From NCBI RefSeq assembly GCF_021869535.1, contig NW_026262581.1:80476001-80540000 (forward strand): a DNA stretch of 64,000 nucleotides. Reading direction: 5' to 3'. Made by a program: the position numbers and the translations under genes. Each line of letters opens with the position of its first letter. The first letter of the stretch is position 1. Source of the stretch: Mytilus californianus. Its lineage: Eukaryota. A model generated the notes under the pieces. That model was not told the origin of the DNA. It saw only the letters and a list, made by a program, of their open reading frames with translations, and ran no database searches. Positions 27 through 58,987 of the stretch are shown here, in pieces.

Positions 27-1143
27 TTTTTGTCGAGCATGCGACTTTTGTCGCAGAAAGCTCGACATAGGGATTGTGATCCGGCGGCGGCGTTAGCTAA
101 CTTCTTAAAAGCTTTATATTTTAGAAGGTGGAAGGTCTGGATGCTTCATACTTTGTATATGGATGCCTCATGTTACGAAGTTTCCGTCAGTCACATGTCC
201 AATGTCCTTGACCTCATTTTCATGGTTCAGTGACTACTTGAAAAAAAAGTTAAGATTTTTTGTAATGTTAAATTCTCTCTTATTATAAGTAATAGGATAA
301 CTATATTTGGTATGTGCATACCTTGCAAGGTCCTCATGCCCGTCAGACAGTTTTCACTTGACCTCGACCTCATTTCATAGATCAGTGAACAAGGTTAAGT
401 TTTGGTGGTCAAGTCCATATCTCAGATACTATAAGCAATAGGTCTAGTATATTCGGTGTATGGAAGGACTGTAAGGTGTCATCTGAGCTTGACCTCATTT
501 TCATGGTTCAGTGGTTATAGTTAAGTTTTTGTGTTTTGGTCTGTTTTTCTTATACTGTATGCAATAGGTCTACTATATTTGGTGTATGGAATGATTGTAA
601 GGTGTACATGTCTAGCTGGCAGGTGTCATCTGACCTTGACCTCATTTTCACGTTTCAGTGGTCAAAGTTAAGTTTTTGAGTTTTGGTCTTTTTTTCTAAT
701 ACTATATGCAATAGTTCAACTATATTTGGTGTATGGAAATATTTTATGATCTATATGTCAGTCACGCAGGTTTTTTTTTTACCTTGACCTCATTTTCAAT
801 GTTCATTGCTCAGTTTTAAGTTTTTGTGTTTTGGTCTGTTTTTCTTAAACTATAAGCAATAGGTCAACTATATTTGTTGTATGGAAGAATTGTTAGCTGT
901 ACATGCCTGCCTAGCATGGTTCATCTGACCTTGACCTCATTTTCTTGGTTCATTGGTCAATGTTTAGTTTACTTGGTTCATTGGTCAATGTTTAGTTTAC
1001 TTGGTTCATTGGTCAATGTTTAGTTTACTTGGTTAATGTTAAGTTTATGTGACAGTTGTAATAAAGCTTTATACTTAGGACTATCAACATAATATCAATG
1101 ATTAGTAAAGAAGGCGAGAAATTTCAGCGTGTGCACTCTTGTT
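27..1143 (+). mobile_element. Non-autonomous satellite-bearing element (HINE/Helentron-associated or Pearl-like)
   Basis: 5' nested hairpin TGTCGAGC-a-TGCGAC-tttt-GTCGCA-gaaa-GCTCGACA (31-67) after a T-run, then a short (GGC)n. Internal degenerate ~147-bp units, with GACCTCATTT at ~210, 366, 491, 638, 786 and 933. A 28-bp unit x3 at 945-1028. 3' end ...GTGTGCACTCTTGTT. The class assignment rests on resemblance to described bivalve satellite-carrying elements. Confidence 0.7.
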
Positions 1144-4170: not shown

Positions 4171-5659
4171 TACGTGCTGTGTTGAATTTGACTTCAAAAC
4201 ATCACCGGCAGAATAAAGTTAAAAATAGAATTACTAGTAGACCCTGTTGATACTGAATTTTTTTTAAAGGAAAGGGTTAGAAACTAGAACTTTTCATTAA
4301 AATTTTATAGATTGTGTGTTTTGTTTTTTTATCTACCGATTAAAATAACTATTTCCTGGAGCTTAGCAATTCTTGATTCATTAAGTTGCAATAAGTTCTA
4401 ACTAAAAGGGCAATCTAATCAACAATTTAATTTGTGAATCATCACATTTGTTTTAGATACTGTCTAATTTTAAATAAGACAAACATCGACAAAAGTTTAA
4501 GAGAATTCAAACGTACTAATTACATAATATGCATGTTAAAACTTACAAAGTCGGTGAAATGCTAGAACCACTGCTGCTCGTGACCGAGGTTGAACATATC
4601 GTAGAAGAACAAGTATTTAACAGGGAACCAGTACAGCAAAATTCATTTGACGTACATGTCAGCTCTTGGTAGGTATTACTGCTATCAGTATAGCTACAGT
4701 TTGTCGTTGCCATAGCATAGAAGCATTTTGACTAGTGTCTGAAAAGGAACAAGAAAAAAACATTATTTTTTTTCTATTGACCTGCTTTTTTATCCATTTT
4801 ATAAAAATATGGAGATGAGGTATGATTGCCAAAGAGACAACTATCCATAAAAGCACAAATACAGAGGATGTAAGCAATTGTTTTCCTTCTGTAGAATGTA
4901 TGCATAACAGAGTTCTCGAAAAGTGGTAGTCCAAAAGTTTTGACTACCAAAATTTTGCAAAGGACCAACACATTTTTGGTATTTTGCAATTAAAATAATA
5001 CTGAGGACCAGCAGATTTTCGTCAAGGACCACCAGAGATAAACGATTTTGAGAACTCTGGCATAATACGCTTAAGATATTTGGACCATTATAAAAGAGCA
5101 ACCATCATTTCTACCATGATTTATTATTATAGTATTGATTCAGAAGTTTATTTTGAAGGAGTTTATTGGTGTGTAAACTCAACCTGAATTATGTCGGGAA
5201 GACTTCGACCTATGTATTCCAGTGAAAGGTCCAGTTTACACATCGATATTATAAACTTTACTACAACGAACCTAATCAAATTAAAATAAAATGTACGAAA
5301 ACTGCGCACAGATCGAATATTTGTCTTAGATAGATGATTTTTTAGTAGTTGTTATTGGCTTTGAACTAGCTGTCAGTAATTGCGAGTACTCTCAGATCTG
5401 TACTTTAAGTCTTTTTTGTTGTGAGGGATGTATAAATTCCCTGCCACGTCCGTTATGTATTTTTGTTAGATGTTTTTCGGCTTTGTATCGATCTGATGGG
5501 TTTCTCAATTGAATTGTTTTATATTTTTCATGTCGGGGCTTTTTACAGACGACTATGCGGAATGGGTTTTTAACCATGCCACATCTCCGTATTTTTATAG
5601 GTATTTTGCCTGTTTAGGAATTCATACTCGTGTCGTAATGATTTCAGTTGAAATGACGC

Positions 5660-11087: not shown

Positions 11088-11320
11088 TAGAAGTCATTGA
11101 CAGCATTACCAAACACTGTCCAATTTTAGCACCGAAAACAGGGAACTTTTCAAGGTTTCGCACGATCTGAGCGGGGACGCTACTGATGGGTGTAAAAGCG
11201 TTGACCGAAGCTCATTTTGTATGAAGCGCTTCATACTAAGAAGGGCGCACGATGAACGATTTTATGCCCGATGAACGATTGTACGCCCCTATAAAATTAC
11301 AAAAGAAGAATTTACTTCTA
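11088..11320. mobile_element. Small palindromic/foldback element
   Basis: Imperfect terminal inverted repeat TAGAAGTCATT / AATTTACTTCTA, a perfect 18-bp palindrome GTATGAAGCGCTTCATAC (11219-11236), and a duplicated CGATGAACGATT. Confidence 0.4.
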
Positions 11321-12560: not shown

Positions 12561-13366
12561 AAAGTATTTTCTCCCTGACTTAAGTGTCAATCGGTACGTA
12601 TCCAATTTAGTAAGACGTCACAAATAGTCTGAAAAAACACGAACTTGAAGCCAGTATGTTTCCCAATTAGATGGCATATGGATTTTTACCTCGTTGGACT
12701 GATTTCTCATTGGCGTATGCCCGACATCTCCTTTTGTTCATCATTGAACTTCTGATCATCAATGTCCGAGAGTATATTAAGATGAAAGTTATCTGCAAAA
12801 TTGTTTTTTTTAAGTCGAGCTAGCCCATCTCTTCGAGACAAAACACAATATTCTGTTTAAAATACAATCATCTAGTTGCTATCGAATTTCAATAAGTAAA
12901 GTACACCAATTTTTGATTTTGCAAATAAATTTTGTGTGTAAGAGTATTCGATGTATGATTTTCGTAAAGGTAGGATATAGTAAAATGCAACTATATATAT
13001 ATATATATATATAAACAAGTCTAAATTGAAACAACATTCAAACCTATGATTGTGTTGGATAAAAACCGCAATTTTTATACGTGTGCATGCAAAACAAATT
13101 TCTTGTTAGAGGGGTCTAAATACAGCACAAACAACATTTTCCAAAAGACAAAAAAAAGTGAAAAAGTATATTTTAACAAAACGCATTTGACTAACAGGTC
13201 GAACAACAAATGTTCTTAAACCCTGCTGACTGCCATTGGCGATTGCCAAATAAACGGATCACCGATGTAATAAATGGATCTTATTTATAATTTTTATACT
13301 AAACAGAAAACAATAAACTTGCGGAAAAGATGGTATACCGCAAAAAGAAGGTGCAAAAGTTTTTGT

Positions 13367-13410
13367 ACACCATATCCGGATTTCGACAATTAATGTCTCT
13401 TCAGTGATGT
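13367..13410 (-). ncRNA. Minimal type I hammerhead ribozyme (copy 1)
   Basis: Minus strand ACAUCA-CUGAAGA-GACA(UUAAU)UGUC-GAAA-UCCGG-AUA^UGGUGU. Stem I is 6 bp, stem II is 4 bp, stem III is palindromic, and the cleavage triplet is AUA. Confidence 0.88.
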
Positions 13411-13906
13411 TAGGAATCGAAACGGTATTTGGAAAGCCATACAATTTACCTCAATTTGGGATAGACTCTTGAATTTTGAGGAGTCAAAATAGGATGAACG
13501 GATCATATAAACCCGAAGGTAAATATAATACAAGTCCAAACGAAAAAATATAAACAAGTCTAAATTGAAAACAACGTTCAAACCTATGATTGCGTTGGAT
13601 AAAAACCGCAATTTTTATACGTGTGCATGCAAAACAAATTTCTTGTTAGAGGGGTCTAAATACAGCACAAACAACATTTTCCAAAAGACCAAAAAAAGTG
13701 AAAAAGTATATTTTAACAAAACGCATTTGACTAACAGGTCGAACAACAAATGTTCTTAAACCCTGCTGACTGCCATTGGCGATTGCCAAATAAACGGATC
13801 ACCGATGTAATAAATGGATCTTATTTATAATTTTTATACTAAACAGAAAACAATAAACTTGCGGAAAAGATGGTATACCGCAAAAAGAAGGTGCAAAAGT
13901 TTTTGT

Positions 13907-13950
13907 ACACCATATCCGGATTTCGACAACTAATGTCTCTTCAGTGATGT
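13907..13950 (-). ncRNA. Minimal type I hammerhead ribozyme (copy 2)
   Basis: Same as copy 1; the only change is in loop II (UUAGU). Confidence 0.88.
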
Positions 13951-15667
13951 TAGGAATCGAAACGGTATTTGGAAAGCCATACAATTTACCTCAATTTGGG
14001 ATAGACTCTTGAATTTTAAAGAGTCAAAATAGGATGAACGGATCATATAAACCCGAAGGTAAATATATTACAAGTCCAAACGAAAAAATATAAACAAGTC
14101 TAAATTGAAAACAACGTTCAAACCTATGATTGCGTTGGATAAAAACCGCAATTTTTATACGTGTGCATGCAAAAAAAATTTCTTGTTAGAGGGGTCTAAA
14201 TACAGCACAAACAACATTTTCCAAAAGACAAAAAAAAGTGAAAAAGTATATTTTAACAAAACGTATTTGACTAACAGGTCGAACAACAAATGTTCTTAAA
14301 CCCTGCTGACTGCCATTGGCGATTGCCAAATAAACGGATCACCGATGTAATAAATGGATCTTATTTATAATTTTTATACTAAACAGAAAACAATAAACTT
14401 GCGGAAAAGATGGTATACCGCAAAAAGAAGGTGCAAAAGTTTTTGTACACCATAATATATATTTAAAAAAAAAAGAAGTTAGGCGAATTAACTGAAGAAT
14501 TTTGATAAAATAAATGTATTCAAATAGCGAAAAATAACAGTTTATTGAAAATTCATTAGCTAAAATGTTTTGTTCCCATTATAGACCTAATGTAAACTAT
14601 GCCAGCCGCATGAATGTCTTGAACTAGAAAATTAAAATCATTCTATCTTTGTTCCTTTGAAAATTCAATCTCTCATATAAAGTCCTTATATAAATATTTG
14701 TCTTCCACAAATTAGTAATTGATTTAGAGATTAATCGATTACAAATGTAAATTTCATTACATCATCTTATGTCACATCAAGTATAATTTTCAATAATTGT
14801 TATTGAAAATATCTTAGATGCTGTGAATGTTCGTGTTACTTAAGGCTTTGGTTTATGTAAACACGAGTCATATCTATCATCATAATCAAATATAGGTTTT
14901 TTTCTGTGTCATTGTCCAGATTTTGTTCATTTGGCTTCCATTTTCTCTCTTTTGATTGGCAGGTGATTCTTTTATTAGAATTTCCTGATTTTCGTGAATA
15001 TAGAAATGTATGGTATATATATTATTACAGAAATTCATCACTCAGAAAAACTAAACTAGTTGAGGGATTTAAAGAAAATAATGACTTCCAGGCATGCAAG
15101 TTTTATAAAATTGCAAAAAGTAATTTTCCAAAATTGACAGGAAAACAAATTTAATAGTAAAAATCATGGATTTCAGATTTCATACTTAGATTTGTTGGTT
15201 TTAGCTTTTCAGCTTGTTTTTTTTATCGGCGTTTTTTCATATCGTGGCAAAGATATTTAATGGTTCAAATGTGTTTCTATTGTTAAATATTATATATACG
15301 TCTACCAGTAAAGTCGCTGGAAAAGCTATAATTCCTGTGATAATTCCAACTAGAAATACTTTACCTGCATGTACCTCTAGATCTCTTATCGACGTTTCTT
15401 ACAATTTTTGTCATTTGAATGTAATGTGTGCATTTTAACCAGGAATTTTCGTCAATCAAAGACAGGGAAAGGTAAAACATATTTCTACACTATCTTTCAT
15501 TGATAAGTTTATTTTCATCATGAAAAACGCTGGAGGAACAATAAGAAGGAACTTATTGCAGCCTTAATTGTCCATATATATTTTAATGCGATCTCAAGGT
15601 ATGCAAATATACATCTTATTTTTTCAGTTATCTAAACCCCACGGTTGGAAAAAATGTATACATCGAA

Positions 15668-31993: not shown

Positions 31994-34900
31994 ATACCGA
32001 GGCTTTGAACAACATGAAGATTTGTAAATGTATAAATGAAAATTAAAGAGTGACGTATCTCCAGTTCCCGTTCATGATTATTCAAAATATACATATCTGC
32101 GTGTGGTTTTGTAATTTTAAATATATAAAGAGTAAACTGGAGAAATAATGGAACGCTCATATTTGTGTGTAAACTCATTCGCTGTCATTACATCCGGTAC
32201 CAATGTTGGGTGAAAGTAAACAGATACATGTATATGTACATATTAAAATGAAACTTTCGTCTCCCTACTGGTATTGAATGATTATGTTAATTTATCATAA
32301 TTAAGTTTCCCAAACGAAGTTCAGAGACATTTTTTTTTCAGTTTGTCTTCTCCTAGGCCTTCTTCTTGTTTATTGCACCTAACTAATTCACAGTTGTTTT
32401 GAAACTCTCCAGTTTGCTTAAGTATAGATGGAAGGAAGGTGAGCTTAATTTTGTGTTTTTCTTGAGGGTCTGTCAAGGTATACTTAAACATACAATCGGG
32501 GGAGGGAGGAGGGTATGTCAAACTAATAACTTAACGGTAAGGTCTTAAAAATAATTTAACTGTCGAAAGAGATGCCAAAATATAATTTTGTAATTTACTG
32601 CATTATTGGGATAAAAAGGGTGCAGTAATTTAATTTGGTAATTAACTCAAGAAATGGGTTTAGTTTGGGAAACCTTTTCTGTAAGCATCCTGACTCGTTA
32701 TTTGCTAGTCCGGAGAAACCAAGGTAGTAATTGTTTTAACATTAGACAAACTCCGTTTTGATTTTGGAGATTAAAATATATTTCATCATAGTTGTATGAG
32801 TTACTTCGCAAACATACAGCAATTCTTGTAATAAAACATGTTTGTTTTTTCAGTGAGCCCTACAAAATGTATACACATCTTGATATATTCATTGAATTGG
32901 TATAAAAATAAGGAGATGTTGTATAATTGCCAATAAGATAACTAAATTAAAATAACTCCTCCAAAGTTCAAATGAAGTGGATGTAAGCAATTAAAGGCAA
33001 CCGTGCGGCCTTCAACAGTGAGAAAAACCCATACCGTATAGTCGGCTATAAAAGGCTCCGACATGAAAAAAATATGAAACAATTCAATTGAGAATGGCCT
33101 AATTTATAACAAAACAAATATGACGGACATGATCCAACGACAACCACTGAACTACAGGCTCCTGGCTTGAGACAGGCACTTATAGAATGTGGCGGTGCTA
33201 AACTTGTTTGCTGGCGCCAAACCCTCCTCCTAGCCTGCGCAGTGGTGTAACAGTACAACATAAGAAAAACTATGAAAATCAGCTGAAAAGGGCTTAACAT
33301 GTACATGTATCTTGTGCAAAAGTCTATTTCACCTTCTCATAATCCTATGAAATTTTATAACAGCTAGCTTCCTCTCCTTCTATTCTCAAATCAATGGGAC
33401 TTTTATGGAGGAAAAAGTTTTAACGAAGTATCATAAGCTGAGTGCGCAGAGGTTTGTATCTTTTTGCAGTGCTATTGTCTGTACTGATTAAATCATTGCT
33501 GTATTGGTCTCTTTTAGATAGAAAGTAAAAAAATGATACAAAAAACAAAATTCGTTTCAACAATACAACTACATGATGATTATCCATCCAGACATAAATG
33601 CCTGCATATTTGAGATCAACAAAATTTAAGCAGTAAGCTTTTGTTATTTGAGTGATTTACGTTTTTTTTTTAATAAATATCCACACATAATGGATGATTA
33701 TTATAATTCATCATCGTTTGTTATACTTTCCATGTATGGGAAATGATTTTGTAATTATTGAATTATTTGTTGTTAAATGTCAAAAGTGAATGGTATTCTC
33801 TTATCAAACTGAAGGTTGGTTGTAAAGGCAATAAATAGTAAGTATATTTTTTATTATTTATTGCAGAACGTAAGGACTTTTTTTTTTATTCTACAATGGC
33901 ACCATATTAATATTTTGTGATTGTATATGTTGCTATGCAATATCTTATATATGTCCAACAAATGTGATATCCTTCAAAAGAAGTATGTATTGTTCATGCT
34001 AAGCCTATTTATTTTTGAAGCAGAGATCAAAAATATTGTAAATAATGTTTAACAAATGGGAAATGTATATTTGTTATATTACCCTTCATGATTAAATGTT
34101 TGAATTTGAATTCGGCAAATTATTTATTCAAACAAAAATTTGGCTTCAACAATACACATTTTTGGTACAGCCCTGGTAGTATAGTTATTAAAACAATTGA
34201 ATTGCAAATATCTAATGCTACGTCATTGACAAACTGAGTATTTCAATTTTGTATGTGTAATTTATGCTAGTTATAGTTCTTGAAAAATTGATATTTTCCT
34301 CACTCCATGCACCAATAGCAGTTTTCGTTTCTTTCGGTGCACCGCCAGTGATCTTGGTGAGGCTATTTCGTTTAGTTCTAATCTCAACATTTTATCTTTC
34401 CCGTCTTGTGAAATGTGCGTTATACTATGTCTGCCTGGACTAAGCTTAGCCACAAGAATACTGCTATCTTTTAACAACGCTATTCCATGTATATAGCCAA
34501 AACCATCAACTTTCAATGTAAATTTTCGTTTTCCACTATGTGTGTACGAATGCACCAAACATTTCTTTGTTTCAGCATAACTAATAGTTTCTGCATTTAT
34601 GTCAACTGGACCTTCGTCGTTGTGTTTCATCGATATTATATTAATACTATTATCGCTCCCAACTAAATATAATCCAGTTTTCTCACAAACTACTACCAAG
34701 AGACTGTCTTCATACGCGTTTAGACCGGATGCGTTACTAGGGAGAATAAGTTCATCAATTTGTTCCATGGAATTGATATCACGGACTTCTACTCGACGAT
34801 CATTCAACATTGATATAAAGAGCTTCGAATTTCCTAGTACAGCCACATCGAACGGTTCGAATGGCAAGGAAACTTCTTGAAATATTTGACCCTTGTCCTT

Positions 34901-35129
34901 CACATGTAAAAGCCTCTTGTGAGCTGTATCAGCTAAAATAATGCTCTCATCTGGCATGAATGCAGCCCCAGACACTTCAGGAAGGAACTTGTCAAGAGAA
35001 GTATTCATATTAAACTCCTTACTGCGTTTTAAACGTGTTCTATGCCATCGATGGTCTTCTTTGTTCTCAACTGTTGTTTTTGGTTTAACAGTTTTGAGAC
35101 TTGGTAAGAACGGATTGATATTAAGCATT
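31994..35129. repeat. Tandem segmental duplication, copy B
   Basis: Counterpart of 28072-31411; contains the intact gene's 3' half and its downstream flank. Confidence 0.92.
32904..33298 (-). mobile_element. Duplicated copy of the twister-bearing non-autonomous element (twister fold 33144-33245, decayed)
   Basis: Minus strand GAGGG-TTTGGCGCCAGC-AAACAAGTT-TAG-CACC-GCC..G-CCTG-TCTCAAGC-CAGG-AGCCTG. Confidence 0.7.
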
Positions 35130-35824
35130 TCCAAGTTTACGTAAGCGTTTGCTTCTATTGTTTCAACTGAGCCTAACGATTTTATATTCAAAACATCTTT
35201 TATGGCTTCGGCGAGTTTGAATTCAACTGAATAGTTTCGAATTGTCTCATTTAGTTTCGTAAGATGTTCTACCTCGTGTTTTGCAATCGCCATTCCTTTC
35301 TTAGCAGCTAAAATAATTTGTAAATTAGACCCATATTCCTTAGCTTTCGCCGATTCGTCGTCATGTGAATCAAGAACAGCATTTCGATATTTATAATCAG
35401 TTATTTCTCCCGAAAGGTTTGTAGCGTATTTTTCACATGTTTTATCCAGTTCACTGATGAGTTTGTTCTCTAGTTCTATCAAATGATAATTTAGATTTTC
35501 TCTTAATTTCCTAATTTCATCGCGAATTTGTACTTTTTGAGTTTTTACACTCTCTATATTGCCTTCTCTTTCTCTTTGCAACTTTTTATATATTTTTCTT
35601 ATGTTTCCAAACTTAACTTTCAGTGTTTTGAAATCACTGTTAAGCTGAGCTATACTGACAATTTCACTGAGTGGTTCCAGCCCATCACAATCGGAATGGT
35701 CATTTTCTTGACATTCAGAACACACGCCCACGTCATGCACAGGACACCATGAGACAATTTCTTTAGAGTCATGCTTTTCACAATGTTCTGAAATCTTAAT
35801 GTCTGGTTTTCCACGCAAATCCAT
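34271..35824 (-). CDS. B-box / coiled-coil / C-terminal beta-propeller (NHL-like) protein, RING-less TRIM-like, 517 aa
   Basis: CEKH-x8-CPVH-x4-CSEC-x4-H-x2-C B-box, a long helical coiled-coil region, then propeller-type repeats (VSGAAFMPDESIILAD, PFDVAVL, IHGIALL, PRSLAVH). An AG acceptor lies 24 nt upstream of the ATG, so an upstream exon is possible. Confidence 0.88.
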   Translation of the reverse strand: MDLRGKPDIKISEHCEKHDSKEIVSWCPVHDVGVCSECQENDHSDCDGLEPLSEIVSIAQLNSDFKTLKVKFGNIRKIYKKLQREREGNIESVKTQKVQIRDEIRKLRENLNYHLIELENKLISELDKTCEKYATNLSGEITDYKYRNAVLDSHDDESAKAKEYGSNLQIILAAKKGMAIAKHEVEHLTKLNETIRNYSVEFKLAEAIKDVLNIKSLGSVETIEANAYVNLEMLNINPFLPSLKTVKPKTTVENKEDHRWHRTRLKRSKEFNMNTSLDKFLPEVSGAAFMPDESIILADTAHKRLLHVKDKGQIFQEVSLPFEPFDVAVLGNSKLFISMLNDRRVEVRDINSMEQIDELILPSNASGLNAYEDSLLVVVCEKTGLYLVGSDNSINIISMKHNDEGPVDINAETISYAETKKCLVHSYTHSGKRKFTLKVDGFGYIHGIALLKDSSILVAKLSPGRHSITHISQDGKDKMLRLELNEIASPRSLAVHRKKRKLLLVHGVRKISIFQEL

Positions 35825-37059
35825 TGTAAATAAGAATTTAAACGAATCCTAAATTTTCTTGTGTAAAAAAAAGCAAGAATGATGATGCAGTCCTACACTT
35901 TGCTTACTGACATATCTGAAAATGAAGTAAACAAAAGTTACCAATAATTTAAACTTGTATAAAATATAGCTTCGCTAAAATGGGTTTTCTTCTTCTAAAT
36001 GTTGTTTCGTGTCTATCAACCAATATTCAAAATATTTTATTGAAAATCTTACTGTATCATTGATGCTGTTTGACTAACAGGGGATTTTAGATAGCGAATG
36101 ATAAATTATAACAGTCTTGTTTTTTTCTTTCTAAAAATGAGCTTGTTTACAGAATTTATAAATTATTACACATGCTTCAACGGTAACTTTTCTTGTCGAT
36201 ACAAATTACGATAGACTGTACTTGGTTCAACAAGTTTTAAAAAGGCATGTAAATGAATTGGTATCATGCCTTGGCATCTCCAATACAGTAAAGCATTGTA
36301 TGATACCTTAATAGAACCGAAAATAAAATCATCGGATTTAAAACATGACAGATTTCACGAGTTAAGCAAGAACTGCCTGACTATCATGAGCACATGAGTT
36401 CACCCTTGTGTCTTAGTATGGTTCGCGTCGATAGTCTATATTAGATAGTTATGTCAAGGTGCTGTTTGATCATTCATTTTGATATAATGGTTTTGATAAT
36501 GTATTCAATGTCTTCTATTTCTCAAATATGTTCTTTCCCCTTTTATGCAAATGGTCATCCCCTTATTGTTTACTATTCTTTGGTCAAAAAATGTAACTTA
36601 CCTTCGCACTTTGTACCCCGACCTGTCTTTGTTTTAAAACTACGTTTGTCTATATTTTGTGTTTTGATTTAAAGTGTCGATTTCTTTCGATCGTATTTAC
36701 GTTAACAAAGAAATTACGACTAAATATTATTAAACACAAAACATTAAACGGTTATTGAACGTATTGAACTTCTTTTGTTCCATTGATTACTATCAGTGCA
36801 TGATTGTCACCTTTCAAGTTTGTTATTGAAATATTTATTGCATGTATGACGTAAAAAAAATTCCTGTACATTCCCCTTTCTTCGTGTCTTTTTATAATAC
36901 TATATATTAAATTCAAGAATACTGTTAGCCAAAACAAAACACACACAAAAAAACAAAACAAAAACGGAAAAATAGTTAAATAAACTTCAGTGTTGACAAT
37001 GAATATCATTGATATGGTCATAATTATAAATTAAAATGTTTACAAAACTTTGAATTGTT

Positions 37060-48188: not shown

Positions 48189-48304
48189 CAACGGGTAAAC
48201 TCAGCATAATTCGTAAAATATTTTCAGAATTGTAAATTAAGATTTTAGATAAAGTATGAACTATCCTATCTAGTTATGTTTGTTTTTCTTTCACAGCTGG
48301 TATT

Positions 48305-51300
48305 ATGGCAGATCCTAAAGCCAGGCGATCATTGGGTAGATGGCGTTTAGCAACTTTCATCTTCTCGTTTGTAGCATTAGTACTATTTATTTGTATTGTA
48401 GCAATACTTATAACAATTCACACGAGGAAAAAGAAGATAACTACCTGTGAAAGTAAAGAAAACGGACAGTATGGTCATATTGATCTTAAGGAATCAGATA
48501 ATCCATCTGTGTTCCATGATTTAACTTCAAAAGAAGTTAAAGGTTTGATGAAGTATTTATATTCTCAAAAAACGCTCAACTTGGTTAAAACAGCAGATAT
48601 GAAAGTCAATACTAGCTACGTATTTTTAAGTGAATTATACCTGCCAAGGAAAAATTCCGTGCTCGATTATCTAGACAAAAAGGCAACAAAGCCAGCACGA
48701 GAAGCACGTGTTATACTGCTACGAGGAGACAAACAAACGCCAGATATTGAAGAAATAATAGTAGGCCCTTTACCTAATCCAACCGGACATAGGCCGAATC
48801 CTAATAGGAAAAAATCAATTCCATTTATATACCGGCCTATCACTGGTCCAGAACATGTTGGGTCGATAGAAATGGTGACAGTGAAAGTTGACCAAGTACT
48901 TGGAACAATGTTTGAAGATGTTTACGACGGAAAACTATTTAATTGTAATAGCAAATGCTTAATGATTCGATACATAACACCGGTATCGTCTGTGCAGTCC
49001 GGAGAAAAACGACGTAAAACATGGTATTGGCTGTCACAAACTGCGGAATACTTCATCCTACACCCTCTAGACTTTTCTGTATTGGTAGACTTGGATGGAC
49101 CAAACTTTACAATCGAACAAGTTTGGTTTGATGGAAAACTATATAAAACTCTAACGGATGTATTAGATTACTATGAAGCAAATAAGGGATCGTTCTCAAA
49201 GATTAAATTTCCAGATGTTAGCAGTGATCTCTTCTCTACAATGAACCAACGCGGTACACCACCAATTAGTCCTCCTTTAAGAAACCCAGTTCAAGTCTCA
49301 CCTGATGGAAAAAGATATAATGTGAAGGATCGCCATGTGGAATATATGTCTTGGCAATTTGATTTCGGGATGTCACCAATAAGAGGCCCACAACTGTATG
49401 ATTTGAGGTTTAAGAACGAAAGGATTGCGTATGAATTGAGTTTACAAGAACTTTCTGTATTTTATGCAGGATACAAACCAATGCAAGCTTTAGCTAATTA
49501 TTTAGATGGTGTTGGTTTAATAGGAATACAAGCAAAAGGACTTGTCCCTGGGGTTGATTGTCCAAAAGACGCCACGTATCTTAGTTCTACATTTCAAGTG
49601 GAGTCAGATGGTCCATTCTCATTTGAAAATGCTTTCTGTATTTTTGAATACAACCTGGGTATGCCCTTACGTAGACATCATTCCTATTCGTTTTCTTATG
49701 GCAGGTTTTATGAAGGGATGGAAACAACGGTGTTGATCTTAAGAACAATTGCAGTCATTATTAATTATGATTACGTAATTGATTTCATGTTTTATCCTAA
49801 TGGAGCTATGCAGGTCAAAGTTGTTTCTACTGGTTATGTACTTGGCACTTTCTATACTGACAATGAAAGTAAATACAGCTTCAAACTTCACGAGAATTTG
49901 GCGGCTAACATACATCAGCATTTGTTTAACTTTAAAGTCGATTTAGACATTCAAGGAACTGCAAACCGATTTGCAACAGCTAACATTGAAACTGAAGATA
50001 TACCGAACAAGTTTTCGAAAGATTCGAATGCAAGATTAATACAACATAAATTTTCGACTTCTCTCAAAACAACAGAGAAAGATGCTGCATACAAATTCGA
50101 TTTTGAAGCTCCAAAATATTTACTCGTATACAAAGAAGATGTTAAAACAAGAAAAACGTATAAGAAGAGTAAAAGTTATCGAATACTCAATAATGGAATG
50201 TCTAAACTCATCCTCCCAGAAGGAAAAGGAAACGAGCCAAGTATAAGTTGGGCCAGATATCAAGTTGCCATGACAAAATACAACGATTCGGAGCCAACCA
50301 GCAGTTCTTTATACTCAATTCTAGATGCTGAAGACCCAATTGTACATTTTCAGAATTTTATTGATGATAATGAATCAATTGTGGATGAAGTAAGTTATAT
50401 ATGAAATATTAAAAATTTTATGTATGAAAACTAAATGATAACCTATTAGATAAACAATTTAAGAGAAGTGAAACCATGCATGTTTTATCTTGGGAGTAAA
50501 ACAGTGTTATAGACCATGGAAAAATTAAATTTAGAATGTTTACAACTATATACATGATATAAGCAAGATTATTTTACTGACATTTAGGGTATTTAATCAT
50601 GAATTGTTTTTGCATACATGGACGTAATATATATTTCTGTAACTTGATTGCCATAGTAATTTTTTTGTTGTAAACATGCTAAATGATAGAAAAAAAGATG
50701 CACCGATAACTAACTCGATGTACGCAACATCTAAAATGACCTTCATTATGCGCTATTAATGCAAAAGGTTTAGAAATATGCGTAAATCAAGGCATTTTCC
50801 AATAAGTTTATATCACTATATATCTATTTATTACACACCATGTAGAATCGAAAAAAAAACGAGAAACAAAAAGAGTGACACAAATACATTCATGATTACA
50901 TACAAAATTCGACTGACATGATAACATGCGAGGTTCGACTGACAAGACTACATTTGAGGTTCGATTGACATGACTACATGTGAGTATTGACTCAATAAAG
51001 CTGTGACGGCGTGAATGATAAACAATCTTTCGCTCAGACAATTTAGGTTCATCATGCCCAAGTAAACAATACACTGTAAATATAAAATGCAAGTTCTCAC
51101 AAAGCAAAAATGATCATACACAACATTGCATCATTCCAAAAAGGCAGGTTGCATTCCATAAAATCGGAAAACAGTGGGGATAGCCTGAACCGATCTGTTG
51201 CATTTATGCCTGTAGCATTCGCAAAAATGACACGTATAAACCAATACCTAATTCACATAATCATCTTTAACAAGCACCTTACAAGTATTATTCTCTTATG

Positions 51301-52102: not shown

Positions 52103-53176
52103 ATTTATATGTTATAATAAAACAAGTTTCAGGAATCAAACCGTCTGACAAGTGGAAATATATTGTACTTTTATATTTTATGACAATCTGTGCGAACATT
52201 CACTGGACAAATACTTCAGTAATTGATTTATATATGAATATACTTAGCATGCATAATTTATGTGCATTTTATACTTTTTTTTATCCGTGACGTTTATATA
52301 TATTATGCTTGATTCCATGCCCTTAGAGTGTATATTTGTTTGTGTGTATGTTTGTGGGAGATATAACAACTGTCATTAAATGATCATCACTGCTCTTATA
52401 AAAAGCAAACGCATTATTTTATATTTTAATTAAACAAAAATATGCATTGCAATCTGTCAATTTTACTACTTTCAATGCCAGTGTAACACATTTTGTTGAC
52501 TCAGTATTTAGTAGATTTGGTCTCTGGTGGATAGTTGTCCCATTTCAATCATAACACATCTCCTGTTTTCTATATTTAAGATAAATTAAACTTGTATGAT
52601 ATCACAAACCCTTAACGAAAGTATGCAAATCATGCTGTTCTGTTTTGTGATACTTATTTGCGGTCATTATATGATAACAATGAACTGCAACTGCAACTTG
52701 AACTTCATACTTTTCACTCATATGAAAATTTCATATAATTTCATTTAATGGGGGCAACATTTATTACAAATCTTTTGGTTGTTTAAAGAGTTATATATGC
52801 ATAAATAAATCTTTGTTTTATTTGTACAATTGTCGGAAAATGAAAGATTTATTTGTTTTTACCTTCTCGGCGTGACTCGTTTTTCTCCTTGTTTCTCCCG
52901 CTAGTCAAAATACTTTTTAATTTTACGTATATATAAATTGTGTATGTACCGAAACTGTCTTTTGTTGTAGACCGTATGGTAATCCCTAGGTGTTTTTATA
53001 TTGTTCGGTTGCTGTGTCTTCTCATATACCCCTCATTTATTTTTATTCATAATATTAATACATGCCACTTCTCTACACATGCCGATAAAGTTTGAAATTA
53101 ACATACTAATAATATTTCAGGAATATTAAGTATCAAAAGATTGCAGTGTGAAAACTAACAGCTTTTCCCTGTGATC

Positions 53177-56100
53177 ATGGCAGATCCTAGCATCAGGCAA
53201 TCAGTCGATGGACGGCGTTTACTCGTTTTACTCTTGCTACTTATAACAATATCTCTAGTAATTGCAATCATAGTGGTAGTTATTAATACTCATAGCAATA
53301 GAAAGCATCTACCTACCTGTCGCAGAAAAGAGAAAGGACAGTATGGTCAAATTGATCTAAAGGAATCTGATAATCCTTCTGTTTTTCGCGATTTGACTTC
53401 AAAAGAAATTGAAGCATTAATGAATTACTTACATTTGCAACAAAGTCTTAATTTGGTCAAAGCAGCAGATATGAAAGTAAATACTAGTTATGTTTACTCA
53501 TGTGAAATTCATCTACCTAGTAAGAGCTCCGTCCTTGATCATCTTGACAGGAATGCAAAAAAGCCTCAAAGAGAAGCGCATGTCATAATCTTCAGAGGTG
53601 ATAAACAAATACCAGATATCGAAGAAATAATTGTTGGTCCTTTACCCAATCCAACTGGTCATAGACCTGTTCCATATAAAAGACAGTCTATTCCGTTTAT
53701 ATATCGTCCCACTACGGGACCGGAACATATAGGGGTAATAGAAATGCTCAATTTAGAAATTGACCAACTCCTTGGAACAATGCTTGAAGAGTTGTACGGG
53801 GGACGACTTTTAAATTGTGATAGTAAATGCTTAATCATTAGGTACATAACACCGGTATCGTCTGCACTGTCTGGAGAAAGAAGACGTAAAACGTGGTATT
53901 GGCTGTCGCAATTTGCTGAATATTACATTTTACATCCTCTTGATTTTTCTGTATTGGTAGACATGGAGGTAACTAATTACACAATAGAAAACATATGGTT
54001 TAATGGAGAACTTTATGACACTCTTTTAGATGTTTTAAACTATTACGTTGCAAATAAAGGATCTATTATTAAAATTCAATTTCCAAATGTGAACACTGAT
54101 AATTTTTCTACAGCGAAACAACGTGGCATACCACCAATTAGTCCTCTTTTAAGAAATCCAGTGCAAGTATCACCTGACGGAAAAAGATATAATGTGAATG
54201 ATCGTCATGTCAATTATATGTCCTGGGAATTTGATTTCCGGATGTCCACAACAAGAGGTCCACAAATATATGATTTAAAATTCAAGAAAGAAAGGATTGC
54301 ATATGAAATAGGCTTACAAGACATTGCCGTATTTTATTCAGGGTACAAACCCATGCAAGCTATGGCTAACTATTTAGATAGTGTAGGTTTAATCGGATCT
54401 CGTGCACAAGGTTTAGTACCTGGTGTCGATTGTCCAAAGGACGCTACATTTGTAGGGACGACGTTGCTGGTGGAGTCAGACAGACCTTTTTCGTATGAAA
54501 ACGTATTCTGTCTGTTTGAATATAATATAGGTATGCCATTACGAAGACACCATTCCTACTCGTTTTATCATGGTAGGTTTTATGAAGGAATGGAAACAAC
54601 GGTACTGGTTTTGAGAACTATTATCGTTATTGTCAACTATGATTACATTATCGACTTTACATTTTATCCGAACGGTGCAGTACAAGTAAAGGCCGTTTCC
54701 ACTGGCTACGTATTAGGTACGTTTTATACTAAAAATGAAACTAAATACAGTTTCAAACTTCATGAGAATTTGGCAGCTAACATACACCATCATATTTTCA
54801 ATTTTAAAGCCGATTTAGATGTAAAAGGAAAAGAAAATAGATTTGCGACGGTTGACATTGAAACTGAAGATTTATCGAATAAGTTTTCAAAAGACCCGGG
54901 TTCAAGATTATTTCAACATAAGTTTTCGTCTACTCTAAAGAAAACGGAGAAAGAAGCTGCGTATAAATTTAATTTTGAAACTCCAAAATATTTACTTCTT
55001 TACAAAGAAGATGACAAAACGAGGAAAGCTTACGAAAAGAGTAAAAGTTATCGAATACTGAATACAGGAATGTCGAAACAAATCCTACCAGAAGGCAAAG
55101 GTAACGAGCCGAGTATAAGTTGGGCTAGATATCAAGTTACCGTTACTAAATATAAGGACTCGGAACCAACGAGTAGTTCTTTATACTCTATTCTAGATGC
55201 CGAAGACCCAATAGTACATTTTCAGAACTTTATTAATGATAACGAATCAGTTGTTGATGAGGTAAATGTAAAAATAACCGATAAGATCTGCCAAGTTCAT
55301 TTGAAAAAAAAAGATAAAAGATAATGATATTAACTAAGACAGCCGATGGCGTGGTTCCAAACATACACTTAAAACAATCGACCGGGTCAAGTTATTTTTA
55401 TCATCGCCATAAAATAAAAATCAATTCTGAAGGAAAATCATTTAACCCAAATCAACAGTATGAAAGATAACAAAAACTCAAATACACCGATTTATAATTT
55501 AATTTTGGATGTAACGCGTCTTCCGATTAGCTGACGTTGTTTTGTTTATCAGCTCATAGACATAATTTTGTCATGTGACCTTGACGTCATCAACGTTTTT
55601 CATGATTTACTCTGGTTTAAAATGGAATTAAGAATTAAATTATAAGAAATGACTGTATTATTTTTTCTGTCTATTCGAAAAAACATAAAAAATGTGGTGC
55701 ACACTTTAAAATAACCCGCTACGCGGGTTATTCCGTGTGCACCACATTTTTGATGTTATTTCTTCATAGACAGAAAAAATATTAAAGCCATTACTTAAAT
55801 AAACAAAATAATAATAAATAACACCTTTTAAAAGAATGTTTAAAGTTAATGAAAGCAGGGTTGTATGTAACCTACAGTAATTGATATGCACTCATCTGTC
55901 ATACTCTAATGTCGGTGGCTGTATTTCACAGTACATTTCAAACTGAAATGACATTAACAGTACAGGAAGACATGAACTTATGTAATGCTTAAAACAAACC
56001 CTTAAGGTAGATGGGGTGTCTAAATTATAATCCATAGAATTTTTTAATAATTTGCCAAAATGTTGTTTATATCATGCTTTTTAAAAAAAAATAATAAAAA

Positions 56101-57824: not shown

Positions 57825-58883
57825 TTATGATGATTTACATCCATCTACAGATGATTTTGAATATCTGGTTTTCGTCGATATATTTGATGCTTTCGAGAAC
57901 CTTCCTGAAAGTGGGCCTGTTTCTGCTTCGGTCTTTGAGGGAGAGCGTATTTCGGGTCTTTTGTTGATCTGTGTTGTCGGGCGACTGTTTATCATTGGAA
58001 GTGTATAATTATCTTTTTTGGTCTTTTGATCACTTGAAAGTTGACTACAAGGATCAAGCTTTGTTGTCAATATTCCTAAAGTTGTCAAATAAGATTCCTG
58101 ATTTTTTGGATGGATATATACAATATTTATATCTTTTAAAGAATGTATTAGTACTTTGATTTGTTTTCTTTCTTCAGTGGTGGACGTTTTCAAATTATGA
58201 AGTGTAATAAAAACTTGGCTATTTGAGCCAAATTCTTTTACAAAATCTAGCTCCTTTTTATGCTCGTTTACCTTTTCGATTAACCCCGAAACCTTATCCT
58301 CCTGCTTTTCAATGTTTGATGATTTCAAAAGATGCACAGATGACAGTTCTGATAGCAATGCATGCTCTAATGCTTCAAGACGATCAATAATGTTTTGTTT
58401 AATTTCAGCAATAGATTTCGTTATTTCGTCCTTTTGCTTATCTAGTCTTTTTAAATTTTCGGTTCGGTTCTGTGCTAATTTGTTTAATAATTGAATATCT
58501 TCATCCATATCTTTCGTCACGGTCTGTAACAAAGGCGATTGTTTGATTCCCTTTGCGACAGTATCTATTGACTGCATCCTATCGCACCCTCTATGTTTTT
58601 CCGTCATGCATGATCGGCAACACAGTGCATTATGATATGCACAGTACAGATCTAAAATTAGATCCGAATGCAAAGGACAATACTTTTGAGATGTTAAACT
58701 TGGGGATATCTCTGGCGGCATATCTTCTATTTTCTTTAGTGTATGTGCAAGAGTAATTTTATTGATTCGATGCGCATTATTACAATTCTGACATAATGAT
58801 TCAACACAGTCACAACACCAGCTAACTGCCTCTGCTGTATTGTTTTCTCTTTGGCAAGGTTCACAAAACGGAATTGAAGACAT
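57825..58883 (-). CDS. Double B-box / coiled-coil protein (RING-less TRIM-like) with S/T/P-rich tail and no propeller, 352 aa
   Basis: B-box1 CEPC..CCDC..LCQNC..AH..H; B-box2 CPLH..YCAYH..CCRSC..H..C; then coiled coil. Strong acceptor TTTTTTTTTTAG 6 nt upstream of the ATG. Confidence 0.88.
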   Translation of the reverse strand: MSSIPFCEPCQRENNTAEAVSWCCDCVESLCQNCNNAHRINKITLAHTLKKIEDMPPEISPSLTSQKYCPLHSDLILDLYCAYHNALCCRSCMTEKHRGCDRMQSIDTVAKGIKQSPLLQTVTKDMDEDIQLLNKLAQNRTENLKRLDKQKDEITKSIAEIKQNIIDRLEALEHALLSELSSVHLLKSSNIEKQEDKVSGLIEKVNEHKKELDFVKEFGSNSQVFITLHNLKTSTTEERKQIKVLIHSLKDINIVYIHPKNQESYLTTLGILTTKLDPCSQLSSDQKTKKDNYTLPMINSRPTTQINKRPEIRSPSKTEAETGPLSGRFSKASNISTKTRYSKSSVDGCKSS

Positions 58884-58987
58884 AGTTATCTAAAAAAAAA
58901 AGACATTTGCATAAGCCATTCATGTACATATGAATAAAAGAATGATAATCGGAAACATATAATAATTATGATTTTTTTTCAGTTATA

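What the first reader, a model, noticed from the sequence alone, without database searches (positions are those of the whole stretch)
13012..14452. 540-bp tandem array whose boundary coincides with its hammerhead cleavage site
Seen: each full unit holds an intact minimal type I hammerhead on the minus strand (13367-13410, 13907-13950), with predicted cleavage at AUA^UGGUGU. The third, partial unit stops at ...GTACACCA (14452), and only a 2-nt TA microhomology follows. So the minus-strand 5' end of the whole insertion is the ribozyme product end. The other end joins a (TA)n tract at an internal TATA of the unit. The copies are almost identical and carry no credible ORF. Inference: a recent insertion reverse-transcribed from a self-cleaved multimeric or circular RNA and primed at a TA microsatellite, that is, a non-autonomous Penelope-dependent retrozyme-like element. 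At 540 nt it is larger than the mussel retrozymes I recall (about 350-400 nt).
Basis: partly seen in the sequence, partly recalled or inferred. Interest (0 to 1): 0.78.

Follow-up and report, generated by a model that had tools for sequence, protein, structure and literature searches.

The report
Mussel hammerhead retrozyme array in (TA)n
This is one young copy of a very abundant, non-coding jumping element of a mollusc genome whose 540-base repeats each carry a hammerhead self-cutting RNA; that this copy ends at the ribozyme's cut site looks like coincidence, because thousands of sister copies share a fixed tail end but stop at scattered points at the head end.

Summary
Window 13012-14454 holds 2.67 head-to-tail units of 540 bp, 98.5-99.4% alike, with no credible ORF. 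Each full unit has a minimal type I hammerhead on the minus strand at the stated coordinates. The array's minus-strand 5' end lies within 2 nt of the predicted cleavage site.

The genome (1.65 Gb) holds at least 7,272 unit junctions and about 3,900 insertions of this family.
- Nearly all insertions sit in (TA)n microsatellites.
- Their 3' end is fixed at an 11-nt box (TTTAGACTTGT).
- Their 5' ends are scattered, and head-to-head inverted copies are frequent. This is the Penelope-like (PLE) insertion signature.

About 15-20 copies (0.4-0.5%) start at the cleavage site, which is about what a uniform spread predicts. A control ATATA site far from the ribozyme shows a similar local spike. In this copy a phase break in the TA flank favours a start 2 nt upstream of the cut. 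Only 2 copies end at the ribozyme's other product end.

An abundant autonomous PLE with intact ORFs ends in the same box followed by (TA)n, so it is the likely driver.

Verdict: a new, longer family of the known animal non-LTR retrozymes. The scan had already noted this family elsewhere in this genome (s1-340017).

The parts
12992..13013 (.). (TA)11 microsatellite flanking the element's 3' end (sense strand = minus); part of the split insertion target
13012..13551 (-). unit 1 (539 bp), the 3'-most unit on the sense strand; it ends in the family's canonical terminus ...CAATTTAGACTTGTTT
13552..14091 (-). unit 2 (540 bp), used as the reference unit for all family searches
14092..14454 (-). 5'-truncated unit 3 (unit positions 178-540; the junction is ambiguous over 178-180)
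14455..14462 (.). (AT)4 remnant of the target microsatellite on the 5' side; it is out of phase with the TA at 14453-14454
13367..13410 (-). minimal type I hammerhead of unit 1: helix I 6 bp, helix II 4 bp, helix III 2 bp within the palindrome AUCCGGAU; predicted cut between 13373 and 13372
13907..13950 (-). hammerhead of unit 2 (one A>G change in loop 2); predicted cut between 13913 and 13912
13015..13025 (-). 3'-terminal box TTTAGACTTGT next to the (TA)n. It is the fixed start point of copies across the family, is shared with an autonomous PLE, and recurs at the unit junctions 13554-13564 and 14094-14104
13530..13540 (-). second, degenerate box TTTGGACTTGT (unit 12-22; also at 14070-14080), which is almost never used as an end

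Best explanation
The array is one insertion of a 540-bp non-autonomous, hammerhead-bearing retroelement: an animal 'non-LTR retrozyme', and a new, longer family of that kind.

How it most likely works:
1. Genomic arrays are transcribed on the hammerhead strand.
2. A Penelope-like reverse transcriptase/GIY-YIG endonuclease cuts a (TA)n microsatellite.
3. Reverse transcription starts at one fixed place on the RNA, immediately 3' of the box TTTAGACTTGT. On a multimeric or circular RNA this place is internal, 360 nt downstream of the ribozyme cut site.
4. Copying runs through one or many units and stops at variable points. The 5' junction forms preferentially at TA-like positions. Sometimes the other DNA strand is extended too, which gives head-to-head inverted copies.

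The likely driver is an abundant autonomous PLE with a Neptune-type CX5CxxC linker and intact 926-aa ORFs. Its roughly 650-nt 3' UTR ends in the same box followed by (TA)n.

The hammerhead is predicted to act as a dimer through its palindromic helix III. It probably processes multimers into unit-length RNA, which in published mussel retrozymes is circularised. It does not define the ends of the DNA copies.

That this copy's 5' end lies at the cut site is best read as one of the 15-20 such cases expected among about 3,900 insertions. The ATAT at the site may favour this.

Shown here: the insertion anatomy, the shared box, the copy numbers, the motif statistics and transcription of the hammerhead strand.
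Inferred: the identity of the driver, self-cleavage itself, and the form of the template. I lean slightly towards rolling-circle copying of a unit circle for the multi-unit homogeneous arrays.
For: Family size and spread:
- 1,821 first-look candidates lie on many chromosomes.
- 7,272 exact unit-junction 29-mers.
- 4,886 raw matches, about 3,900 loci, of box + (AT)5.

Insertion anatomy:
- Fixed 3' end at unit 537-540 followed by (AT)n, variable 5' ends usually preceded by (TA)n, and head-to-head inverted pairs in L031, L035, L043, L044, L047, L048 and L050.
- 22-30-nt tail-only copies stand in tandem at L050:4658-4735.
- The start site is specific. The second box with a TA-like run is used in 0-1 loci, and the ribozyme's 5'-product end in 2 loci.
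- 5' ends are about 7 times commoner in unit 356-386 than in 150-180 (844 against 194 raw matches).

Driver:
- The L036 ORF has RVT_1, DKG, a CX5CxxC linker and an EN homologous to the GIY-YIG ORF of L050.
- It has 14,860 first-look candidates, with ORFs up to 926-948 aa and no stops.
- Its terminus ...GTACCCTTTTAGACTKGT + (TA)n gives 416 raw matches. Several lie about 660 nt downstream of the ORF hits.
- End-anchored similarity of the last 45 nt is matched by 11 of 1000 shuffles.

Hammerhead:
- 0 hits in 200 shuffles; Rfam RF00163 at E 9.6e-4.
- 95 of 128 sampled units keep it intact.
- The cofold minimum-energy structure is a double hammerhead with an 8-bp intermolecular helix III: -26.7 kcal/mol, against 2 x -9.1 for monomers.
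- An unrelated element (L033:727-770) keeps only the 54-nt module, with compensatory changes in helix III (AUCCGGAU to AUGCGCAU) and helix I (A-U to G-C).

RNA:
- Stranded runs X22 and X23 show first mates mostly on + (245-321 against 15-22), and the flanks are silent.
- Reads run across the cut site, with no pile of starts or ends there.

Array history:
- The window's three units share 10 subfamily variants and differ by private singletons.
- Many arrays are far more homogeneous inside (0.25-1.3%) than between arrays (3.15%).

Literature:
- Mussel retrozymes and their circRNAs (PMC7229834).
- Retrozymes as PLE derivatives (bioRxiv 10.64898/2026.07.22.740005).
- (TA)n targeting, tandem and inverted copies (PMC8557442).
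- Internal RT initiation, cutting of both strands, and HHR dispensable for insertion in a purified PLE (PMC11167929).
Against: - No cleavage, circle or retrotransposition was observed directly.
- The RNA runs are from coded organisms, partly other species, and are probably poly(A)-type libraries. In the unstranded run X21, DNA carry-over could give the same coverage.
- About a third of reads at the unit's 3' end continue into TA repeats, the same share as in the genome. That fits broad read-through transcription, not a dominant circle pool.
- The 540-nt monomer is not unusually structured (z = -1.0), unlike the 'highly self-paired' published circles.
- Homology between element and candidate driver is limited to an 11-nt terminal box. 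The rest of the 3' UTR is not similar (local alignment matched by 19 of 300 shuffles). Several other (TA)n-inserted families also carry TTTAGAC near their ends, so the driver could be another PLE family.
The genome-wide figures come from exact patterns and are lower bounds.
- At nucleotide level, a run-off on a cleaved RNA followed by addition of TA cannot be excluded for this one copy.
Confidence: 0.8

Rival explanations
1. One reading: the minus-strand 5' end of this insertion is the 5'-OH product end of hammerhead self-cleavage. Reverse transcriptase ran off a self-cleaved multimeric RNA, so the boundary reports ribozyme activity in vivo.
For: The junction lies within the 3-nt ambiguous window 178-180 that contains the cut. 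Within unit 150-180, 9 of 30 listed 5' junctions fall at 177-180.
Against: Only 8 exact junctions exist genome-wide, or about 15-20 with variants, among about 3,900 insertions. That is near the uniform expectation. A control ATATA site at 381-385 takes 11 of 49 junctions in its window, so TA-like microhomology explains the spike. This copy, C88:110398286 and C57:446330 show a TT phase break, and C2:33757762 has non-TA filler before TATGGTG. These place T178-A179 inside the element. The 150-180 region as a whole is depleted of 5' ends (194 against 844 raw matches). A purified PLE inserts HHR-dead RNA equally well (PMC11167929).
Confidence: 0.08
2. The 540-bp unit is not a separate non-autonomous element. 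It is the pseudo-LTR of an autonomous Penelope-like element not sampled here, and the arrays are pLTR-only remnants of it.
For: PLEs form tandem pLTRs that carry hammerheads. Xenopus retrozymes are homologous to PLE pLTRs (bioRxiv 10.64898/2026.07.22.740005). PLE ORF fragments lie within 3 kb of 7 of the 20 arrays read.
Against: In L050 and L036 the neighbouring PLE ends in its own (TA)n, and the unit follows as a separate 5'-truncated insertion. Neither PLE's 3' UTR is similar to the unit beyond the 11-nt box. More than 7,000 unit-unit junctions exist against none seen joined to an ORF.
Confidence: 0.08
3. Classical satellite DNA, or tandem repeats carried inside a DNA transposon (Helitron or MITE with a central array, as described in bivalves), spread and lengthened by DNA-level recombination without reverse transcription.
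For: Some arrays show higher-order periodicity and segmental duplication (L049, L045), so DNA-level amplification does occur after insertion.
Against: There are thousands of dispersed short arrays, each with the same 3' terminus, a variable 5' truncation and (TA)n on both sides. Flanks beyond the TA run are unrelated, with no conserved transposon arms. Tail-only copies of 22-30 nt exist. Inverted head-to-head pairs match PLE behaviour.
Confidence: 0.03

Closest known systems
Metazoan non-LTR retrozymes, in particular those of Mytilus galloprovincialis (Cervera and de la Pena 2020, PMC7229834)
   Same: Dispersed short tandem arrays in a mollusc genome, low GC (33%), no ORF, LTR, PBS or PPT. One type I hammerhead per unit with a weak helix III. 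Thousands of copies. Autonomous PLEs co-exist in the genome.
   Different: The unit is 540 bp against about 350-390 bp. No sequence comparison with the published clones was possible (one search found nothing in the held supplement). CircRNA is not shown here, and the predicted monomer is not unusually self-paired. The fixed 3' box, the (TA)n target and the 5'-end statistics are not described in that paper.
Canonical EN+ Penelope-like elements and their insertion mechanism (Craig et al. 2021, PMC8557442; Frangieh et al. 2024, PMC11167929)
   Same: AT-rich/(TA)n targets, tandem plus inverted 5'-truncated copies, a fixed internal RT start on a multi-copy RNA, hammerhead cleavage not needed for insertion, and no RNA-seq ends at the cut site.
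   Different: This element encodes nothing. It shares only an 11-nt terminal box with the candidate driver. The optional 30-40-bp 'tail' between two RT start sites was not seen: the second box is used in 0-1 loci. The start site abuts a TA run, whereas the Anolis element starts at a site not homologous to the target.
Newt/salamander satellite 2 and other dimer-dependent minimal type I hammerheads
   Same: Helix III of 1-2 bp capped by a palindromic loop. The predicted minimum-energy fold of two copies is a double hammerhead. Tandem genomic repeats of a few hundred bp.
   Different: Different host phylum and unrelated sequence. Dimer dependence is predicted here, not measured.
SINE-LINE pairs that share a 3' tail (what it works like)
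   Same: A non-coding element carries the same 3'-terminal recognition sequence and target preference as an autonomous element, and shows 5' truncation.
   Different: Tandem multi-unit copies, a ribozyme, a PLE (not LINE) driver, and a microsatellite in place of a poly(A) tail.

Membership tests
Type I hammerhead ribozyme (Rfam RF00163) | Conserved core C3-U4-G5-A6-N7-G8-A9, G12-A13-A14, A15.1-U16.1 and H17, with helices I, II and III in type I topology | tested here: met
   Descriptor hits at 13367-13410(-) and 13907-13950(-): helix I 6 bp, helix II 4 bp, helix III 2 bp, H17 = A. There were 0 hits in 200 shuffles.
Type I hammerhead ribozyme (Rfam RF00163) | Score at or above Rfam's gathering threshold (34 bits) | tested here: not met
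   22.4 bits over the full-length model, E 9.6e-4 in an 81-nt search. No hit at gathering or at E<=10 in larger searches. The shortfall comes from the minimal helix III.
Type I hammerhead ribozyme (Rfam RF00163) | Covariation or conservation that supports the helices | tested here: met
   L033:727-770 keeps only the 54-nt module in unrelated sequence, with compensatory changes in helix III (C-G to G-C within the palindrome) and helix I (A-U to G-C). This rests on one variant only, so it is limited.
Type I hammerhead ribozyme (Rfam RF00163) | Self-cleavage at the predicted site | not testable with these tools
   No pile of read starts or ends at 13372/13373. That neither shows nor excludes cleavage followed by ligation.
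Metazoan non-LTR retrozyme | [quoted passage not shown] | tested here: met
   (GC 33.1%). At 540 bp the unit exceeds the published 150-450 bp range.
Metazoan non-LTR retrozyme | Transcribed from the hammerhead strand | tested here: met
   In stranded runs X22 and X23, first mates lie mostly on +, and the flanks are silent. The strand convention of the library is assumed.
Metazoan non-LTR retrozyme | Accumulates as unit-length circular RNA | not testable with these tools
   On a tandem reference, circle-derived reads map linearly. No joints were reported. The libraries are probably not total RNA.
PLE-mobilised non-autonomous element | PLE insertion signature: AT-rich/(TA)n target, tandem plus inverted 5'-truncated copies, fixed RT start | tested here: met
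   compared with PMC8557442 and PMC11167929.
PLE-mobilised non-autonomous element | Sequence shared with an autonomous PLE of the same genome (pLTR or 3' end) | tested here: inconclusive
   Only the 11-nt terminal box plus (TA)n is shared with the abundant Neptune-type PLE. The end-anchored 45-nt similarity is matched by 11 of 1000 shuffles, and there is no wider homology.
Satellite DNA or transposon-borne tandem repeat | Long homogeneous arrays or conserved transposon arms, with no fixed terminus or truncation gradient | tested here: not met
   Short dispersed arrays with a fixed 3' end, variable 5' ends and unrelated flanks.

The most novel reading that the evidence does not exclude
The family gives in-genome evidence, from thousands of natural insertions, of three things. 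First, an animal retrozyme is copied by PLE-type internal initiation at a single box-defined site 360 nt from its ribozyme cut site. Second, hammerhead-made RNA ends are used neither as start nor as stop of the DNA copy. Third, an 11-nt terminal box plus (TA)n ties the retrozyme to one abundant Neptune-type PLE. That would be the first sequence-level driver assignment for a mollusc retrozyme, and a natural counterpart of the in vitro result for the Anolis Poseidon element.
Probability: 0.45. Interest if true: 0.55.

Novelty: new member of a known kind. Interest (0 to 1): 0.38.

Why it matters
Animal retrozymes are known, and Penelope-like elements are their suspected drivers. But what the hammerhead does for mobility, and where reverse transcription starts and stops on the RNA, have so far been shown only in vitro, for one lizard PLE.

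This family is large and young enough to read the mechanism from its insertions. There is one fixed start next to a short box shared with an autonomous PLE, stops are scattered, and neither ribozyme product end is favoured. That argues that the ribozyme serves RNA processing or accumulation, not integration. It also offers a concrete pair (retrozyme RNA and a PLE protein) for a biochemical test.

For the scan, the case shows that a striking single-copy coincidence has to be tested on the whole family before it is read as a mechanism.

Tried and rejected
- TRF found no array because the period exceeds 500.
- Rfam at gathering score and at E<=10 on 1.7 kb gave no hammerhead. Weak U6 and C0719 rows there are chance.
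- Folding one hammerhead alone gives a non-hammerhead minimum-energy structure, z = 0.18. The 540-nt monomer folds at z = -1.0. So there is no support for an unusually structured rod.
- The unit shares no tail or other segment with anything else in the window, including its Naiad copy.
- I considered that the PLE ORFs next to arrays in L050 and L036 own the unit as a pLTR. I rejected this: each ends in its own (TA)n before a separately truncated unit.
- I first took the L036 PLE for a Naiad. I rejected this: its endonuclease is C-terminal.
- A relaxed hammerhead search of that PLE's 3' UTR found only a CUGAUGA...GAAA core with a 5-bp helix II, and no helices I or III.
- Pol III termination at the T6 after the box was rejected as the cause of the fixed end, because the unit holds several longer T runs.
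Later searches gave coordinates only.
- The supplement of PMC7229834 held no matching hammerhead string.
- Within-array against between-array distances do not decide between a circular and a multimeric template.
Full report
1. The observation

Window 13012-14454 holds three head-to-tail copies of a 540-bp unit in register (spacing 540, 540). Units 1 and 2 differ at 8 positions. The partial unit 3 differs from unit 2 at 3 positions. TRF missed the array only because its longest period is 500.

On the minus strand each full unit carries the string CAUCA-CUGAAGA-GACAUUAAUUGUC-GAAA-UCCGGAU-A^UGGUG. My descriptor finds it at exactly 13367-13410 and 13907-13950, and finds nothing in 200 shuffles of the 64-kb window. 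Rfam's Hammerhead_1 model aligns to 13367-13410(-) over its full length at 22.4 bits (E 9.6e-4 in an 81-nt search). That is below the gathering score of 34, and the model did not report in the larger searches.

The partial unit begins within 2 nt of the predicted cut. blastn extends it to unit position 178, and the cut lies between 179 and 180.

Two details need correcting. The sense-strand 5' flank reads ...AAATATATAT|TATGGTG, so a remnant of a TA microsatellite flanks this end too. The 'internal TATA' at the other end is the canonical terminus of the whole family.

2. The family

The window lies in a 1.65-Gb, 175-contig genome. An RNA run that holds the unit is labelled 'mollusc metagenome', and earlier notes of the scan call the genome a mussel.

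The unit is dispersed over many chromosomes, with 1,821 first-look candidates. Exact-pattern counts give 7,272 unit-unit junctions. They also give 4,886 raw matches, about 3,900 distinct loci, of the unit's last 15 nt followed by (AT)5 or more. These are lower bounds.

- The sense-strand 3' end is fixed at unit 537-540 (...CAATTTAGACTTGT or ...TTGTTT) and is followed by (AT)n almost everywhere.
- The 5' ends run from unit 1 to 502 and are usually preceded by (TA)n as well.
- Flanks beyond the TA runs are unrelated.
- Seven loci hold head-to-head inverted pairs.
- L050:4658-4735 holds three tandem tail-only copies of 22-30 nt.

A fixed 3' end, 5' truncation, a microsatellite target and tandem plus inverted copies together make up the insertion signature described for Penelope-like elements (PMC8557442).

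In the 45 segments, only the window copy (178) and L038 (175) start within 5 nt of the cut.

A pattern anchored just after the cut, with a TA run up to 30 nt upstream, listed about 30 distinct loci. Nine of them start at 177-180. The rest start at 146, 155, 158, 162-163, 166-168, 169-172 and 175.

The same test anchored at unit 386 listed about 49 loci. Eleven join at an ATATA (381-385) that has nothing to do with the ribozyme, and fourteen join at 360-363. The cut site sits inside an ATAT, so a local spike of this size is what TA-like microhomology gives elsewhere in the unit.

Genome-wide there are 8 exact (AT)4-ATGGTGTAC... junctions, or roughly 15-20 when phase-broken and filler variants are scaled in. 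That is 0.4-0.5% of about 3,900 insertions. A uniform spread predicts 0.56% for a 3-nt window. The whole 150-180 window is in fact poorer in 5' ends than 356-386 (194 against 844 raw matches).

At nucleotide level, the window copy, C88:110398286 and C57:446330 show a TT break in the TA phase, and C2:33757762 has non-TA filler before TATGGTG. All of these place T178-A179, which lie upstream of the cut, inside the element.

The complementary prediction also fails. Copies that end at the ribozyme's 5' product (...CCGGATA joined to a TA run) occur in 2 loci.

A run-off on cleaved RNA followed by addition of TA cannot be strictly excluded for this single copy.

4. What defines the fixed end

The unit contains several TA-like runs, but only one is used. 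A second, degenerate box (TTTGGRCTTGT followed by a 6-7-nt TA-like run, unit 12-29) serves as an end in 0-1 loci genome-wide. So the start is site-specific and not a matter of microhomology alone.

The same terminal design appears in an autonomous element.
- The ORF in L036 (594 aa here; 926-948 aa and free of stops in other copies; 14,860 first-look candidates; many copies 95-97% identical) has RVT_1, a DKG motif, a CX5CxxC linker and a C-terminal endonuclease homologous to the GIY-YIG ORF of L050. This makes it a canonical EN+ PLE with the linker that marks the Neptune and Nematis clades (PMC8557442).
- Its 3' UTR of about 650 nt ends ...GTACCCTTTTAGACTKGT followed by (TA)n.
- That terminus gives 416 raw matches genome-wide. 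Several lie 659-660 nt downstream of ORF hits on the same strand (C1:47182560, C2:53951806, C2:10223454).
- Apart from this 11-nt box, the UTR and the unit are not similar. Local alignment is matched by 19 of 300 shuffles, and the end-anchored 45 nt by 11 of 1000.
- Other (TA)n-inserted fragments in the loci also carry TTTAGAC next to the TA run.

I read the box as the shared 3' recognition or start signal, and this PLE family as the most likely driver. That assignment is an inference.

5. The hammerhead

Of 128 sampled units that cover the motif, 95 keep it intact, and 93 of those keep the palindrome AUCCGGAU.

Alone, the motif does not fold as a hammerhead: the minimum-energy structure is -9.1 kcal/mol and the hammerhead fold is -3.1. 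Two copies cofold at -26.7 kcal/mol into a double hammerhead with an 8-bp intermolecular helix III. This is the arrangement known for newt and axolotl motifs, which cleave well only as dimers (PMC7229834).

An unrelated element (L033:727-770) shares only the 54-nt module (87% identity). It has AUGCGCAU in place of AUCCGGAU and a G-C in place of the outer A-U of helix I, which are two compensatory changes.

In RNA runs of another species (organism C), most reads match only window 13361-13441 (unit 111-191, the hammerhead block) and then run on into unlike sequence. So the module is conserved in a different expressed family.

6. RNA

Four runs were laid on window 12700-14800. The single-copy flanks have no reads, while the units are covered. 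In the two stranded runs the first mate lies mostly on + (245-321 against 15-22 over the hammerhead, and about 4:1 over unit 328-540). Under the usual convention this means the minus, hammerhead strand is transcribed.

Reads cross the cut site. There is no pile of starts or ends at 13372/13373, and no joints were reported.

About a third of reads at the unit's 3' end continue into TA repeats, the same share as array ends have in the genome. This fits read-through transcription of many copies. These data neither show nor exclude circles, because a tandem reference hides them. For the unstranded run, DNA carry-over cannot be excluded.

7. Mechanism, and what is inferred

Shown here: the insertion anatomy, the site-specific start, the target, the shared box, the statistics of the motif, and transcription of the right strand.

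Taken from the literature:
- Mussel retrozymes accumulate as circRNAs made by hammerhead cleavage and RtcB-type ligation (PMC7229834).
- Retrozymes are PLE derivatives (bioRxiv 10.64898/2026.07.22.740005).
- A purified Poseidon PLE starts reverse transcription at fixed internal RNA sites, cuts and extends both DNA strands, prefers AT-rich DNA, and inserts hammerhead-dead RNA equally well (PMC11167929).

The genomic record of this family behaves in the same way.

Not decided: whether the template is an uncleaved multimer or a unit circle copied round and round.
- For circles: many arrays are far more uniform inside (0.25-1.3%) than the 3.15% between arrays. The window's three units share 10 subfamily variants and differ only by private singletons. 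And 5' truncation alone could never lengthen arrays.
- For linear read-through RNA: the RNA-seq proportions noted above, and the weak predicted structure of the monomer.
- Post-insertion duplication also occurs (L045, L049).

8. Comparison and novelty

The element fits the animal non-LTR retrozymes in every feature I could test, except that its unit (540 bp) is longer than the published 150-450 bp, and longer than the 350-390 bp of M. galloprovincialis. CircRNA could not be tested.

The hammerhead meets the structural definition of type I but not Rfam's curated score.

It is a new member of a known kind. The scan had already met this family on other pieces of this genome and reached the same class (s1-340017, s1-302566).

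9. Limits

- Only 20 arrays were read with flanks.
- Genome-wide numbers rest on exact patterns and on the first 100 rows of long lists.
- Organisms of the RNA runs are coded.
- No experiment was possible.

Noticed in passing
L033:727-770 (-) (G000:C110, about 2.2 kb from a 540-bp array): An otherwise unrelated sequence carries the same 54-nt hammerhead module (87% identity). It has compensatory changes in the helix III palindrome (AUCCGGAU to AUGCGCAU) and in the outer pair of helix I, and C as the cleavage-site base. It is a single copy in the locus, and its element type is unknown.
   Followed up: partly
L036:5460-7909 (-); also L050:5668-7159 (-), L039, L044, L045, L048, L042: A very abundant canonical EN+ Penelope-like family: 14,860 first-look candidates, intact ORFs up to 926-948 aa, a CX5CxxC linker, and a roughly 650-nt 3' UTR that ends in TTTAGACTKGT + (TA)n. 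PLE ORF fragments lie within 3 kb of 7 of 20 retrozyme arrays, presumably because both use (TA)n targets.
   Followed up: partly
L036 (-) about 5525-5560, in the PLE 3' UTR: A hammerhead-like core (CUGAUGA, a 5-bp hairpin, GAAA) with no recognisable helices I or III. It may be a relic or an atypical motif.
   Followed up: partly
L050:4658-4735 (+): Three tandem copies of only the last 22-30 nt of the unit, each followed by TATATA. They look like aborted insertions that started at the box.
   Followed up: partly
window 13412-13425 with 13375-13386 (-), unit 127-139 with 165-176: A stretch upstream of the hammerhead (CCGUUUCGAU) pairs with GUCGAAA..CGG in the minimum-energy fold, hiding the GAAA core and helix III. 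This is a possible off-state. The stretch lies inside the 81-nt block that is conserved in the expressed family of another species.
   Followed up: no
window 13361-13441, RNA runs X22 and X23 (organism C): Hundreds of reads match only this 81-nt hammerhead block and continue on both sides into consistent but unlike sequence. So a different, well-expressed family with the same module exists in a related species.
   Followed up: no
L049:489-9301 and L045:2899-5791: Higher-order periodicity (a repeating pattern of unit identities every 5 units) and an exact 1.65-kb segmental duplication of an array with its flank. Arrays also grow by DNA-level duplication after insertion.
   Followed up: no
window 48260-50401 (+) and 53159-55321 (+): Two tandem, uninterrupted ORFs of 714 and 721 aa, each with copper amine oxidase domains (Pfam E 1e-90 and 1e-86).
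   Followed up: no
window 57828-58889 (-) and 34274-35848 (-): ORFs of 354 and 525 aa with B-box zinc-finger matches (TRIM-like). The second match is weak.
   Followed up: no
window 11246-11288: A short 19-bp tandem repeat (2.3 copies), unrelated to the array.
   Followed up: no
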